A program made the translations under genes and the position numbers. Positions 2,345 through 5,833 of a stretch of 5,833 nucleotides of DNA are shown here, in pieces. Numbering within the stretch: the stretch's first letter is position 1; each line of letters opens with the position of its first letter. Location: positions 1 through 5,833 of the IMG/VR virus record IMGVR_UViG_3300027933_000048. One strand, 5' to 3'. The notes beneath the pieces were generated by a model. That model searched no databases, had not been told where the DNA came from, and worked only from the letters and a program-made list of their open reading frames with translations.

Positions 2345-3234
2345 TGAAATTAATATTTGGAGTTAATGTTTCAACTAGTTATCTTTTTAAAACCAATTTT
2401 CCAGTTTTAATAAATCAATTGAGATTTAGAAAAAGAAAATGGAGAAATGAAACTTGGATAGATAGCGGTGGCTTTCAAATTATTATGTATAATTTAAAAA
2501 TTTCGCCACACGACATTTTAGCAAAATATAAAAGCTTTAACGCTTATGCCTTCTTTTCACTAGATATACCAAGTATTTTTTCACCGCTTAACAAAAAAAA
2601 TTATGAATATTTTGAGTATTTATATACCAAAATTGAATGGATTGAAAAAATTATACCTGTAATTCACATTTATCCAATTCAAGAATTAGATGAAGCAATT
2701 GATTTTTATAAACAATATAGCTATTATTTTGCAATTGGAGGCTTAATCCCGTCAAGCAAAAAGAAAATTCTAATTTATGCATTTCCGTGGGTATATTATT
2801 TAAGAAGAAGAGTTCCCTATCTGCACGTTTTAGGCATGTCAGGCCCATACTTTTTACAAACTTTTAGTAATGTTGATAGCATTGATACCGGAACTTATAG
2901 CAAAACAGCCGCATTTAGGGAAATATTTTGGTTTAATGGAACTGTAAAATATGTAGGCAAAAGAAGACCAAAAAACATAACCAGAGAAGAAAAAGAAGAA
3001 CTGTTTGAATTTTTGGATAAATGTAATTTCCCATTTGAATATGATTTAAGTAATTTCAAAATTCTGGAGCTTATAAATGCATATATGTTACTGTATAACA
3101 ATTGGAAAATTAAGAATAAGTATACAGAATATGCCAAAAAATTAAGAGGAATGGGAATAGATAGTTTAACAATGGAGTTAATTAAAAACTATAAAATTGC
3201 GGCTGAAATATTATCACAAAAAAGAGAAAAATAG
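2344..3234 (+). CDS. tRNA-guanine transglycosylase-like (TGT/DpdA family) protein, 296 aa
   Basis: Catalytic DSGGFQ motif, plus SLDIP, IPVIH, AIGGL, LHVLG and DSID motifs in TGT order. Start overlaps the permease stop (TAATG, 2342-2346). Confidence 0.88.
   Translation: MKLIFGVNVSTSYLFKTNFPVLINQLRFRKRKWRNETWIDSGGFQIIMYNLKISPHDILAKYKSFNAYAFFSLDIPSIFSPLNKKNYEYFEYLYTKIEWIEKIIPVIHIYPIQELDEAIDFYKQYSYYFAIGGLIPSSKKKILIYAFPWVYYLRRRVPYLHVLGMSGPYFLQTFSNVDSIDTGTYSKTAAFREIFWFNGTVKYVGKRRPKNITREEKEELFEFLDKCNFPFEYDLSNFKILELINAYMLLYNNWKIKNKYTEYAKKLRGMGIDSLTMELIKNYKIAAEILSQKREK
3203..3232. repeat. Cassette-boundary repeat, copy 1 (inside the TGT 3' end)
   Basis: CTGAAATATTATCACAAAAAAGAGAAAAAT, 29/30 identical to 3551-3580. 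Confidence 0.85.
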
Positions 3235-3256
3235 GCGATAAAAAAGGAAATTAGAT

Positions 3257-3550: not shown

Positions 3551-3595
3551 CTGGAATATTATCACAAAAAAGAGAAAAATTATAGATAAAAAAAA
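3551..3595. repeat. Cassette-boundary repeat, copy 2 (contains - strand TTTTTCT terminator-like tract)
   Basis: CTGGAATATTATCACAAAAAAGAGAAAAATTATAGATAAAAAAAA, immediately after the stop of the 70-aa gene. Confidence 0.85.
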
Positions 3596-3598
3596 TTA

Positions 3599-3811
3599 TT
3601 AAGCCTGAGACCGAGAAGAAAGAGATGAAAATAACTTGTTAGCATATTCGCTATCATAGCCATGGTAATAAAAAATTTTGTCGTTATTGCTAAGGACAAA
3701 AACCCCCCATCTAGGGGGATTGCAGCATGTGCATTTTGCTAAAACTACATTATTTTTAATTTGAATTTGTTGAAAGTTATGGTATTGCACACCTAGGGTT
3801 TGAACCTTCAT
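3599..3811 (-). CDS. Small hypothetical protein, 70 aa (MKVQTLG..., CTCC motif), candidate anti-defense gene
   Basis: The track start 3826 lies upstream of the TSS predicted from the TATA (about 3818). ATG 3811 follows the leader GAGGGAT. Confidence 0.75.
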   Translation of the reverse strand: MKVQTLGVQYHNFQQIQIKNNVVLAKCTCCNPPRWGVFVLSNNDKIFYYHGYDSEYANKLFSSLSSRSQA

Positions 3812-3828
3812 ATCCCTCAATTGCATAT

Positions 3829-3900: not shown

Positions 3901-3930
3901 AAGTAATATTATTACAAACTTGAGAAAAAT
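3901..3930. repeat. Cassette-boundary repeat, copy 3
   Basis: AAGTAATATTATTACAAACTTGAGAAAAAT aligns without gaps to copies 1 and 2. Confidence 0.7.
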
Positions 3931-4010
3931 AGACAATAAAAATAGATGAAAATAGAAAACTAAAACATAAAATTATAAAAAGAAAAATAAAAGATAAAAA
4001 AAGAATAAAA
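3931..4010 (-). terminator. T-rich terminator region after the HTH gene
   Basis: Multiple oligo-T runs on the - strand directly after the stop at 4011. Confidence 0.55.
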
Positions 4011-4178
4011 TTACCAACAATCTTCCATGTATTTCTTGGCTTTTCTTTCAGATATCCCTAAAAATTGGGATATCTCGCTCACTGAGTAGCCCTCTCGGGC
4101 CAACTCGTGAGCTATTGAAATCATATCGTCTTCTGATTCAACCATGTATCTTACACCTCTTACACTTATGCTTTTCAT
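4011..4178 (-). CDS. 55-aa helix-turn-helix DNA-binding protein, SIRV gp1/ORF56a-like (Aca8-like)
   Basis: MKSISVRGVRYMVESEDDMISIAHELAREGYSVSEISQFLGISERKAKKYMEDCW has a classic HTH (GYSVSEISQFLGISERKAKKY). ATG 4178 follows GGGGATAAGAAG. The track's longer N-terminus runs through the promoter. Confidence 0.85.
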   Translation of the reverse strand: MKSISVRGVRYMVESEDDMISIAHELAREGYSVSEISQFLGISERKAKKYMEDCW

Positions 4179-5028: not shown

Positions 5029-5070
5029 CTGAATTTTTATTACAAAACTGAGAAAAATTGTAGATAAAAA
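5029..5070. repeat. Cassette-boundary repeat, copy 4
   Basis: CTGAATTTTTATTACAAAACTGAGAAAAATTGTAGATAAAAA. 5048-5067 is identical to 5540-5559 (20 bp). Confidence 0.8.
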
Positions 5071-5139: not shown

Positions 5140-5436
5140 TTATTGAATGAAGTGCGTTCGTTCGTAAGAATCCTTAATCCTAAAAAGCATGTCATTGACA
5201 ACACTAGTCAGATTGGCCCACACTGACTTCATTTCCTCACATTGAACTCCATCAACTTCATATTCTACCCGTAGATAATACACACTGCCGCCCCATCCGT
5301 CAGGGCCTAAGAGCAGTTTGGCAGAAACAATTTTAACTTCAGTAGGAAAGTTGTGAATTTTTTGGCTGTATTTTATTACATCTTGCGTTAAATCCTTAAT
5401 GACCTGATATATTTTTTCTTCCTCTTGTTTACTCAC
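5140..5436 (-). CDS. Hypothetical protein, probably 98 aa from GTG 5436 (MSKQEEEK...), candidate anti-defense gene
   Basis: The track ATG 5472 overlaps the TATA box and ATG 5454 precedes the predicted TSS (about 5449). In-frame GTG 5436 follows a perfect SD GAGGTGA (5448-5442). Confidence 0.8.
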   Translation of the reverse strand: MSKQEEEKIYQVIKDLTQDVIKYSQKIHNFPTEVKIVSAKLLLGPDGWGGSVYYLRVEYEVDGVQCEEMKSVWANLTSVVNDMLFRIKDSYERTHFIQ

Positions 5437-5458
5437 CTTCTTCACCTCTAACATACAT

Positions 5459-5507
5459 ATGCATCTCCTCATATATAAAGTTTTCTCTACCTTTGTATTT
5501 TTGCATG
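5459..5507 (-). promoter_or_regulatory. Strong early-type promoter of the 98-aa gene
   Basis: CATGCAAAAATACAAAGGTAGAGAAAAC-TTTATATA(5479-5472)-N10-CAT. Confidence 0.8.
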
Positions 5508-5520
5508 TTTATTGTTGTCA

Positions 5521-5559
5521 TAGTATTATTATATCAACTCTGAGAAAAATTGTAGATAA
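5521..5559. repeat. Cassette-boundary repeat, copy 5
   Basis: TAGTATTATTATATCAACTCTGAGAAAAATTGTAGATAA, sharing an exact 20-mer with copy 4. Confidence 0.75.
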
Positions 5560-5628
5560 TCTTAACTACAATTAGAAATAAAATTAGAATTAAATGGCTT
5601 GGAAGTTTTTCATCACATGGTTCAGCTT
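5543..5628 (-). ncRNA. Candidate small non-coding transcript (about 50-85 nt), or an emptied cassette
   Basis: Lies between an intact promoter and T-rich terminators. Only ATG-TGA and a 7-codon ORF are present. Contains CTGA-ACCAT-GTGATGA. Confidence 0.4.
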
Positions 5629-5638
5629 AAAGATACTA

Positions 5639-5687
5639 ATGTAACTTATGGTATTTAAAGTTTTCTGCATCCTTGTATTTTTCTATC
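5639..5687 (-). promoter_or_regulatory. Strong early-type promoter with no downstream protein gene
   Basis: GATAGAAAAATACAAGGATGCAGAAAAC-TTTAAATA(5659-5652)-N10-CAT, same architecture as the promoters at 3842, 4214 and 5472. Confidence 0.75.
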
Positions 5688-5833
5688 TTAGCACCTTTTT
5701 TATCATCTTATCATTTTATCCTTTAACTGGAAAATATATTTCAAATCGTTTCTTTCCTTTTTCTCCTGCTATATGAAATGCGGAGAAATATATCTGCAAC
5801 AACTACCCTGCAAATTGCAACTATTAACTACTA

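What the first reader, a model, noticed from the sequence alone, without database searches (positions are those of the whole stretch)
5543..5687. Intact strong promoter driving no protein: candidate viral small RNA with a box D'/C' (K-loop-like) motif
Seen: a full early-type promoter with predicted +1 near 5628 gives AAGCUGAACCAUGUGAUGAAAAACUUCCAAGCCAUUUAAUUCUAAUUUU..., ending in T-rich tracts and repeat copy 5. Coding capacity is only AUG-UGA and MKNFQAI. CUGA-N5-GUGAUGA matches box D' followed by box C'. Known: such K-loops bind L7Ae in archaeal C/D sRNAs. Inference: an RNA cargo in an anti-defense array (L7Ae/sRNP decoy, guide or antisense RNA). Alternative: an emptied cassette, since GTGATGAAAAACT resembles the leader GTTGTGAAAAACT-ATG of the 76-aa gene.
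Basis: partly seen in the sequence, partly recalled or inferred. Interest (0 to 1): 0.7.

Follow-up and report, generated by a model that had tools for sequence, protein, structure and literature searches.

The report
Orphaned early promoter cassette, rudivirus end
An intact early-gene promoter of a Sulfolobus rod-shaped virus is followed only by the stub of a gene's start region, and the supposed small-RNA "box" motif is that stub's ribosome-binding site and start codons, so this is most likely an emptied gene cassette rather than a new viral RNA.

Summary
The window is a complete 5.8-kb metagenomic contig from the end of a Yellowstone-type SIRV-like rudivirus.

**What is confirmed.**
- A full early-type BRE/TATA promoter lies at 5652-5685.
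- The predicted +1 is near 5628.
- No real ORF follows the promoter.
- T-rich tracts and the inter-cassette repeat come next.
- CTGA-N5-GTGATGA lies at 5610-5625.

**Why the K-loop reading is not supported.**
- In 43 distinct gene-driving early promoters from this virus group, a Shine-Dalgarno-like GGTGA/GAGG sits about 32-38 nt after the first T of the TATA box. The start codon sits at about position 44.
- In this cassette, CTGA occupies the Shine-Dalgarno position (GGTGA with G changed to C). GTG-ATG occupies exactly position 44.
- There is no partner C or D box, no Rfam match and no fold better than shuffled sequence.
- The motif is expected 0.07 times per window by chance.

**Relatives.** Ten hot-spring contigs carry the same stub, with an ORF of 8-10 codons, in front of at least five unrelated genes. 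Other close relatives lack the cassette entirely.

**Best reading.** This is a gene-less copy of the known early (anti-defence) promoter cassette at the inner edge of the terminal repeat. It probably still makes a short, unstructured transcript. Interest is low.

The parts
5688..5833 (-). Inner part of the terminal-repeat-like region, leading up to the orphan promoter
   Evidence: Near-identical in 9 other contigs that extend further into repeat-rich terminal DNA. By synteny it matches the inner ITR of SIRV9, whose ITR (left 1-518 = right end, 97.7%) ends inside the TATA box of the first promoter at both ends.
5652..5685 (-). Early-type regulatory sequence: upstream block gaaaaatacaagg, BRE cagaaaac (5667-5660), TATA TTTAAATA (5659-5652)
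   Evidence: One of 4 copies of repeat family D5. The others precede the 98-aa gene, the Aca8 homolog and the 75-aa gene. It matches the published early/anti-defence promoter consensus, strong BRE + TTTAWATA (PMC11065993).
5628..5628 (-). Predicted transcription start (position 32 counted from the first T of the TATA box)
   Evidence: Inferred from promoter geometry and from the position of Shine-Dalgarno-like motifs in 43 related cassettes. Not measured.
5622..5628 (-). AAGCTGA at the Shine-Dalgarno position (cassette positions 32-38).
   Evidence: Aligns with GAGGTGA of the neighbouring 98-aa gene cassette, with GTGA changed to CTGA. Of 43 gene-driving promoters, 39 have an SD-like motif starting at positions 30-34.
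5590..5616 (-). Stub ORF GTG-ATG-AAA-AAC-TTC-CAA-GCC-ATT-TAA.
   Evidence: GTG is at cassette position 44, the modal start position (25 of the 42 gene-driving promoters with an ORF start in range). All 8 distinct orphan copies start at position 44 and have ORFs of 8-10 codons.
5544..5589 (-). T-rich tracts (5583-5576, 5549-5545) and a weak hairpin (5573-5546): probable transcription stop
   Evidence: Read directly from the sequence. The hairpin is the only helix in the fold and is broken in 4 of 10 relatives. Termination is inferred from the known oligo-T rule for archaeal RNA polymerase.
5525..5559 (+). Copy 5 of the inter-cassette repeat that follows each small gene of the array
   Evidence: Family D2, 5 copies, 77-100% identity. 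A homologous module follows a 65-aa ORF in isolate V65 and gp41 in SIRV1.
5472..5505 (-). Next early promoter, driving the first real gene
   Evidence: D5 family copy, with SD GAGGTGA and GTG at position 44.
5140..5436 (-). First real gene after the orphan cassette (98 aa from GTG 5436; called as 104 aa from ATG 5454)
   Evidence: 18 homologs, many starting MSKQE/VSKQE.
4011..4178 (-). Aca8 homolog (55-aa wHTH), probable repressor of the early promoters, including the orphan one
   Evidence: 53% identity to the C-terminal 55 aa of SIRV2 gp01, which PMC11065993 identifies as Aca8. phrog_7067 labels it 'terminase small subunit'.

Best explanation
This is an orphaned (emptied) copy of the rudiviral early/anti-defence gene cassette, sitting at the inner edge of the terminal repeat.

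The promoter is complete and probably fires immediately after infection, like its sister promoters (inferred). It is probably repressed later by the virus's Aca8 homolog (inferred). The transcribed stretch keeps the standard 5' layout of these cassettes, with a degraded Shine-Dalgarno (GGTGA to GCTGA) at positions 32-38 and start codons GTG-ATG at position 44. The reading frame stops after 8-10 codons and runs straight into the T-rich inter-cassette repeat.

The product would be a short (about 45-85 nt), unstructured transcript, possibly translated into a trivial peptide, with no demonstrated function. The CUGA-N5-GUGAUGA 'K-loop' is simply the Shine-Dalgarno, spacer and start-codon region.

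The cassette most likely arose through cassette turnover, by recombination among the repeated promoter and terminator modules. It persists because it lies in, or next to, the terminal repeat of a young, recombining virus population.
For: Shown:
1. The promoter belongs to a 4-copy family whose other members drive real genes. It matches the published early-gene consensus.
2. In 43 distinct gene-driving early promoters from the window and related loci, 39 have an SD-like motif at positions 30-34 (30 of them at 32). The ORF start is at position 44 in 25 of them. In all 8 distinct orphan copies, GCTGA occupies the SD position and GTG sits at position 44, with an ORF of 8-10 codons.
3. Direct alignment with the neighbouring gene cassette is colinear from the upstream block through GTG.
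4. Variant B of the cassette has a TATA-to-start spacer almost identical to that of real 98-aa-gene promoters.
5. In relatives L015, L017, L037 and SIRV9, the promoter at the ITR edge drives a real gene directly. In L049-L052 and L007-L009, with the same ITR junction, the orphan cassette is absent. It therefore behaves as a dispensable indel unit.
6. There is no RNA signal: no Rfam match, fold z-scores of 0.13 to -1.4, and a terminator hairpin that is broken in 4 of 10 copies.
7. The motif is at chance level and has no partner boxes.
Against: - No relative with a full-length ORF in this cassette was found, so the gene-loss step is inferred. The 3' half of the stub (cttccaagccattta) has no identifiable source in any related locus or phage record.
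- The cassette is kept intact in 10 contigs from several samples, in front of at least 5 unrelated genes.
- The part that is conserved between the two promoter-proximal variants begins almost exactly at the predicted +1. Selection on the transcript would predict the same pattern.
- The promoter shows no decay.
- No expression data exist.
Confidence: 0.6

Rival explanations
1. DNA-level regulatory element. The gene-less promoter could act as an extra binding site for TBP/TFB and the Aca8 repressor, as a titration site or insulator. Or it could act as a tandem promoter whose leaky T-tract lets transcription read into the first real gene. Either way it would tune early expression at the genome end.
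For: It carries the complete shared regulatory sequence, not just a TATA box. It always sits directly upstream of a second early promoter, about 180 nt away, whatever gene follows. An Aca8 homolog is encoded in the array, and Aca8 is proposed to bind this regulatory sequence (PMC11065993).
Against: Close relatives do without it. Two T-tracts, including a run of five T, separate it from the next gene. No binding or read-through data exist.
Confidence: 0.15
2. Functional immediate-early small RNA or micro-peptide of unknown mode of action, not dependent on a K-loop. For example, a short RNA acting on a host factor, or the 8-10-residue peptide (V/M)MK[N/S]FQAI(YF).
For: The promoter is intact, and conservation of the transcribed part starts at the predicted +1 while the 28 nt between TATA and +1 come in two unrelated versions. 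The cassette is kept in front of at least 5 different genes. A start codon lies at the canonical position in all copies.
Against: The untranscribed flanks are equally conserved. The only coding changes are non-synonymous (N/S) or move the stop codon. The Shine-Dalgarno is degraded in every copy. The fold is not significant. No Sulfolobales genome in the reference set contains the conserved 20-mer on either strand. The cassette is absent from close relatives.
Confidence: 0.1
3. One reading: a viral small RNA whose CUGA-N5-GUGAUGA forms a K-loop that binds host L7Ae, acting as a decoy, guide or antisense RNA.
For: The motif satisfies the minimal D'-loop-C' sequence pattern (box consensus RUGAUGA/CUGA as given in PMC5539422). 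Both boxes are unchanged in all 10 copies, and the one change at the R position (G to A in L019) stays within the consensus. L7Ae is known to bind K-turn-like motifs in Sulfolobus mRNA leaders (PMC5539422).
Against: - The boxes coincide with the Shine-Dalgarno and start-codon positions of the cassette.
- No terminal C or D box exists on that strand, so a box C/D sRNA cannot form.
- CUGA would lie only 3 nt from the 5' end.
- There is no Rfam match.
- The motif is expected by chance in 7% of shuffled windows and occurs eight times in five unrelated (non-rudiviral) loci.
- Box conservation equals that of the flanks.
Confidence: 0.04

Closest known systems
Early / anti-defence gene (ADG) regulatory cassettes of rudiviruses (Bhoobalan-Chitty et al. 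2024, PMC11065993)
   Same: It has the strong purine-rich BRE and the TTTAWATA box. It shares flanking regulatory sequence with other promoters of the same genome. It lies at the genome terminus among small single genes, together with an Aca8 homolog.
   Different: No protein-coding gene follows, only an 8-10-codon stub. The published pipeline starts from annotated ORFs, so gene-less copies were not catalogued.
ITR-terminal promoter of Usarudivirus SIRV9 (drives gp01 on the left end and gp58 on the right end)
   Same: It has the same position at the inner edge of the terminal repeat. In SIRV9 the repeat ends inside the TATA box and the two ends diverge from there. This parallels the two promoter-proximal variants seen here, TTTAAATA... 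and TTTATAAA....
   Different: In SIRV9 each copy drives a real gene (112 aa and 65 aa). Here the sequences re-converge after 28 nt into a common stub and terminator repeat.
Archaeal box C/D sRNA C'/D' motif (K-loop) bound by L7Ae
   Same: It has the sequence pattern CUGA, a 5-6-nt loop, then (R)UGAUGA.
   Different: It has no terminal C and D boxes, no guide-length architecture, no structural or comparative support, and a simpler explanation of the same bases.
Promoter-proximal gene remnants (pseudogene stubs) left by cassette turnover in variable terminal regions of linear viral genomes
   Same: It keeps the promoter, leader and start codon and has a truncated frame. It shows presence/absence polymorphism among close relatives.
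   Different: The parent gene could not be identified. The only hints are weak: in 8 of 10 copies the stub begins ATGAAAAGC, like the window's aca8, and the post-stop TAATTTTATT(T)CT resembles the aca8 3' flank.

Membership tests
Archaeal box C/D sRNA | C box (RUGAUGA) near the 5' end, paired with a D box (CUGA) near the 3' end | tested here: not met
   On the minus strand between 5480 and 5720 there is one CUGA (5625-5622) and one RUGAUGA (5616-5610), with the CUGA upstream. No CUGA lies downstream of the RUGAUGA.
Archaeal box C/D sRNA | Internal D' followed by C' with a 3-9-nt spacer | tested here: met
   CTGA-ACCAT-GTGATGA at 5625-5610. However, it is expected 0.07 times per window by chance and also occurs in unrelated loci.
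Archaeal box C/D sRNA | Guide segments of 10-12 nt complementary to host rRNA or tRNA next to the D/D' boxes | not testable with these tools
   No host rRNA or tRNA set was available. An exact 20-mer scan of reference genomes found no Sulfolobales match, but that scan cannot detect 10-12-nt guides.
Archaeal box C/D sRNA | Match to a curated RNA family | tested here: not met
   No Rfam match at E up to 10 in 5400-5833 apart from an irrelevant lncRNA model. None at gathering score in the whole window. Rfam has no generic model for archaeal C/D sRNAs, so this test is weak.
K-turn / K-loop L7Ae-binding motif | GA dinucleotides on both strands able to form tandem sheared G-A pairs, closed by a short loop | tested here: met
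   It is sequence-compatible. The source paper itself says K-turn prediction from sequence is unreliable (PMC5539422).
K-turn / K-loop L7Ae-binding motif | Comparative support: motif conserved above background, or covarying | tested here: inconclusive
   The boxes are invariant in 10 copies, but so are the untranscribed flanks. All variation is blocky and biallelic in a closely related population.
K-turn / K-loop L7Ae-binding motif | Binding by L7Ae | not testable with these tools
   Needs a gel shift or RIP-seq.
Rudiviral early / anti-defence gene cassette | Strong BRE plus TATA (TTTAWATA) | tested here: met
   cagaaaac + TTTAAATA at 5667-5652. The consensus is from PMC11065993.
Rudiviral early / anti-defence gene cassette | Regulatory sequence shared with other early promoters of the same genome | tested here: met
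   Family D5, 4 copies of 34 nt. The shared upstream block is aaaaatacaaagg.
Rudiviral early / anti-defence gene cassette | Terminal location among small single genes, with Aca8 | tested here: met
   It is the first cassette after the ITR-like region. The Aca8 homolog is at 4011-4178.
Rudiviral early / anti-defence gene cassette | Drives a protein-coding gene | tested here: not met
   The longest frame from the canonical start is 8 codons here and 8-10 in relatives, against 25-119 or more for 42 gene-driving promoters.
Gene remnant (pseudogene stub) | Leader and start-codon layout retained, colinear with intact paralogous cassettes | tested here: met
Gene remnant (pseudogene stub) | An intact ortholog or parent gene identifiable in relatives | tested here: not met
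   No related locus or phage record holds the stub's 3' half. The C-termini of the neighbouring gene family do not match it. No IMG/VR contig carries the variant-B start with a longer ORF.

The most novel reading that the evidence does not exclude
The gene-less early promoter, probably present in the terminal repeat at both genome ends, produces an abundant immediate-early small RNA. That RNA would act in anti-defence or host takeover, for example by binding L7Ae through the K-loop-like CUGA/GUGAUGA. It would have been exapted from a former Shine-Dalgarno/start region. This would be the first RNA-based early effector described for an archaeal virus.
Probability: 0.06. Interest if true: 0.7.

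Novelty: new member of a known kind. Interest (0 to 1): 0.2.

Why it matters
Taken at face value, it matters little. It is one more copy of the known rudiviral early promoter, here without a gene.

It has two modest uses:
1. It shows that pipelines which predict anti-defence genes from early promoters, but start from annotated ORFs, will miss gene-less promoter copies. Scanning for such copies could map cassette turnover at rudivirus ends.
2. It is a worked example of how a Shine-Dalgarno plus GTG/ATG start region in Sulfolobus viruses can mimic box D'/C'.

If the short transcript did prove functional, it would be the first small-RNA effector of an archaeal virus.

Tried and rejected
- **Rfam.** A permissive scan of 5400-5833 and a gathering-score scan of the whole window found nothing relevant. 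No tRNA or tmRNA was found.
- **Folding.** Neither the 88-nt and 52-nt predicted RNAs of both variants nor an alignment fold of the 7 distinct copies beat shuffled sequence, and there is no covariation to count.
- **Search for a parent gene or full ORF.** These searches found nothing related:
  - blastn of 5583-5640 against 50,697 phage and archaeal-virus records gave only chance hits in Salmonella and E. coli phages.
  - blastn-short against all fetched rudiviral loci.
  - An IMG/VR scan for the variant-B start.
  - The C-termini of 18 homologs of the neighbouring gene.
- **Host homolog, target or CRISPR spacer.** An exact 20-mer scan of 185,579 reference genomes gave only three chance bacterial hits.
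- **IMG/VR scans.** The window is the only contig there that carries the element. A scan with the ITR-junction motif added one related contig, L037, which has no orphan cassette.
- **CRISPR-repeat mimic.** I considered that the repeat copy at 5545-5570 (plus strand, GATAATCTTAAC...) mimics a Sulfolobus CRISPR repeat. The resemblance was recalled from memory only (an 8-nt seed plus scattered matches), is at chance level for AT-rich DNA, and was not pursued.
- **Plus-strand 42-aa ORF (5648-5776).** Rejected. It is the T-rich complement of the promoter, and it is truncated and differently initiated in variant B (read).
- **Bacterial-type promoter/terminator scan.** Uninformative for an archaeal virus.

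Full report
**What the window is**

The 5,833-nt window is an entire IMG/VR contig (IMGVR_UViG_3300027933_000048).
- Its left 3.2 kb is about 80% identical to the glycosyltransferase / permease / tRNA-ribosyltransferase-like block of Yellowstone Sulfolobus islandicus rod-shaped viruses, genus Usarudivirus (Pfam hits).
- The right 2.6 kb matches these viruses only weakly.
- On the minus strand, the right part holds an array of small single-gene cassettes. Each has a BRE/TATA promoter (repeat family D5), a short ORF, and a T-rich inter-cassette repeat (families D1/D2).
- One cassette encodes a 55-aa wHTH protein that is 53% identical to the C-terminal 55 residues of SIRV2 gp01. That protein is Aca8, the proposed repressor of rudiviral early/anti-defence promoters (PMC11065993).

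**Checking the observation**

- The TATA box TTTAAATA is at 5659-5652, with a purine-rich BRE directly upstream.
- The 34-nt block 5652-5685 is one of four family copies. The other three precede real genes.
- +1 is predicted at A5628.
- CTGA-N5-GTGATGA is at 5625-5610.
- T-tracts lie at 5583-5576 and 5549-5545, and repeat copy 5 at 5525-5559.
- No ORF of any size follows. I add only that GTG at 5616 opens an in-frame 8-codon frame.

The promoter is clearly non-random. The box motif is not. It is expected 0.07 times per window, with 15 of 200 shuffles containing one.

**What the two 'boxes' really are**

I collected 54 distinct early-type promoters (GAAARN-TTTAWAWD) from the window and from related rudiviral loci, then extended the set to about 60. 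I lined them up on the first T of the TATA box. The layout is strikingly fixed.
- Among 43 promoters that drive genes, 39 have a Shine-Dalgarno-like GAGGTGA/GGTGA/GGGGA starting at positions 30-34, and 30 of those start exactly at position 32.
- The ORF start is at position 44 in 25 of them, with a range of 37-46.
- The ORFs run 25 to more than 119 codons.

The cassette of the finding has AAGCTGAACCAT at positions 32-43 and GTG-ATG at 44-49. The neighbouring real gene has GAGGTGAAGAAG and then GTG at the same positions.

So 'box D'' CTGA is the GTGA of the Shine-Dalgarno with one base changed. 'Box C'' GTGATGA is two start codons at the canonical start position. The 5-nt 'loop' is the normal spacer between the Shine-Dalgarno and the start codon. 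This fully accounts for the motif without any RNA-structural role.

The same geometry shows that the neighbouring gene probably starts at GTG 5436, giving 98 aa. This agrees with the many homologs that begin MSKQE or VSKQE.

**No RNA-level support**
- On the minus strand from 5480 to 5720 there is exactly one CUGA and one RUGAUGA, so a terminal C/D pair cannot form.
- Rfam gives nothing.
- The predicted 88-nt RNA folds no better than shuffles (z = 0.22). In my own runs the z-scores for the short and long forms of both variants were 0.13, 1.0, -0.8 and -1.4.
- The only helix is the hairpin in the T-rich repeat, and it is destroyed in 4 of 10 relatives.
- No Sulfolobales genome among 185,579 reference genomes contains the conserved 20-mer on either strand.

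**Relatives**

A metagenome scan with the conserved 21-mer found the same element in seven further hot-spring contigs, besides the window's own JGI record and chance matches in unrelated metagenomes. Two more copies came from look-ups of the neighbouring protein. That makes ten contigs in all, the window included.

Four points stand out.
1. None has a real ORF. All have the stub (V/M)MK[N/S]FQAI, ending there or after two more codons (YF).
2. The element is always the first cassette after repeat-rich terminal DNA. It is always followed, about 180 nt on, by a second early promoter. Behind that promoter lie at least five unrelated genes.
3. The 28 nt between TATA and +1 come in two unrelated versions. 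Version B is almost identical to the spacer of real 98-aa-gene promoters.
4. The transcribed part is no better conserved than the untranscribed DNA upstream. All variation is blocky and biallelic, as expected for a recombining population of very close relatives. The conservation of both boxes is therefore uninformative.

**The cassette is dispensable, and it sits at the edge of the terminal repeat**

Contigs L049-L052 and L007-L009 share the same terminal junction, near-identical up to window position 5707. After that point they have a different spacer of about 125 nt and a single promoter directly in front of the 98-aa gene. L015, L017 and L037 have an even shorter junction. The orphan cassette (about 5706-5510) thus behaves as an insertion/deletion unit made of promoter, leader, stub and T-rich repeat.

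In SIRV9, the inverted terminal repeat (518 nt, 97.7% identical between the two ends) stops inside the TATA box of the first promoter at both ends. There that promoter drives two different real genes. By synteny, the window's orphan promoter is this ITR-edge promoter.

In the window's lineage, the sequence shared by all contigs continues to the TATA box of the second promoter. The orphan cassette probably therefore lies inside the terminal repeat and is present twice per genome. This is an inference; no complete genome of this lineage was available.

**Best explanation and rivals**

| Reading | Confidence |
|---|---|
| Emptied early-gene cassette | about 0.6 |
| DNA-level role (extra TBP/TFB/Aca8 site, or tandem promoter for the first gene) | 0.15 |
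| Functional small RNA or micro-peptide of unknown mode | 0.1 |

Under the best reading, the promoter and translation-start region are intact, the body of the gene is lost, and the frame runs into the terminator repeat. The cassette probably still gives a short early transcript.

The gene-loss step is inferred. I found no parent gene for the 3' half of the stub. There is one weak hint. In 8 of 10 copies the stub begins ATGAAAAGC, like the window's aca8. The bases after its stop codon also resemble the aca8 3' flank, and in SIRV2 aca8 is the gene inside the terminal repeat.

Three observations keep the RNA readings alive:
- The promoter is undecayed.
- The cassette persists in front of different genes.
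- Conservation between the two variants resumes almost exactly at the predicted +1.

**Comparison with what is known**

The promoter is a member of the early/anti-defence regulatory family described by Bhoobalan-Chitty et al. (PMC11065993). That study started from annotated ORFs, so gene-less copies were not reported. I found no paper describing small RNAs of rudiviruses.

The element fails the defining tests for a box C/D sRNA. It meets only the minimal sequence pattern of a K-loop, and the L7Ae literature itself regards such sequence patterns as unreliable predictors (PMC5539422).

**Verdict**

The feature is real but ordinary: an orphaned member of a known promoter family. The eye-catching motif is explained by the standard Shine-Dalgarno/start-codon layout. 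Interest is about 0.2. The most novel reading that is not excluded, an immediate-early viral small RNA, has a probability of about 0.06.

Noticed in passing
L013:8-90 (+); also L015:625-710, L020:653-735, L022, L024, L031:702-785, L037, L001 (isolate V65) and L043 (SIRV9). The element lies outside the window, about 300 nt beyond window position 5833.: A second gene-less promoter-like element lies deeper in the terminal repeat and is conserved across Usarudiviruses, including SIRV9 and V65. It reads gaagaaaga-TTTAWAWA, then AGAAGAAAG, a variable loop of about 27 nt, and the inverted arm CTTTCTTCT. It has no Shine-Dalgarno-like motif and no start codon (9 distinct copies). The arms are invariant and the loop is variable. 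It could be a protein-binding site or a real non-coding transcript, and it is a better ncRNA/regulatory candidate than the finding itself.
   Followed up: partly
window 5140-5472 (-): The first real gene is called as 104 or 110 aa from ATG 5454 or ATG 5472. Promoter geometry (SD GAGGTGA, GTG at cassette position 44 = 5436) and homologs starting MSKQE/VSKQE indicate a 98-aa product. The family has 18 relatives, no Pfam/PHROG/NCBIfam match, and a conserved LLLGPDGWGG...SYERTHFIQ core.
   Followed up: partly
window 4011-4178 (-): This 55-aa wHTH protein is labelled 'terminase small subunit' by PHROG 7067 and in RefSeq rudivirus records. It is an Aca8 homolog (53% identity to SIRV2 gp01; PMC11065993). 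The terminase label looks like a propagated misannotation.
   Followed up: yes
window 3207-3244, 3555-3592, 3905-3942, 5033-5070, 5525-5559: A 35-38-nt inter-cassette repeat (AT-TATCACAAAA-GAGAAAAAT-TAGATAA on the plus strand) follows every small gene of the array. Its first copy overlaps the 3' end of the converging 296-aa ORF. Homologous modules occur between genes in SIRV1 and isolate V65. It could be a terminator, an upstream operator of the next promoter, or the recombination substrate for cassette shuffling.
   Followed up: partly
window 3701-3721 (-), inside the 75-aa ORF 3599-3826: A G+C-rich perfect hairpin (CCCCCTAGATGGGGGG followed by TTTTT) sits in otherwise roughly 28% G+C DNA, within a coding region.
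   Followed up: no
window about 5629-5651 versus L013:353-375: The 28 nt between TATA and +1 of the orphan promoter exist in two unrelated versions in the population, and contig L024 is a recombinant of the two. This mirrors SIRV9, where the left and right ends diverge exactly inside the TATA box of the ITR-edge promoter.
   Followed up: partly
L007:1-187, L009:3-125, L049-L052 (about 125 nt between the ITR junction and the promoter): Relatives that lack the orphan cassette carry a different spacer of about 125 nt in its place. Gene callers read this spacer as part of a 40-61-aa ORF running into the promoter. Whether it is another gene remnant was not examined.
   Followed up: no
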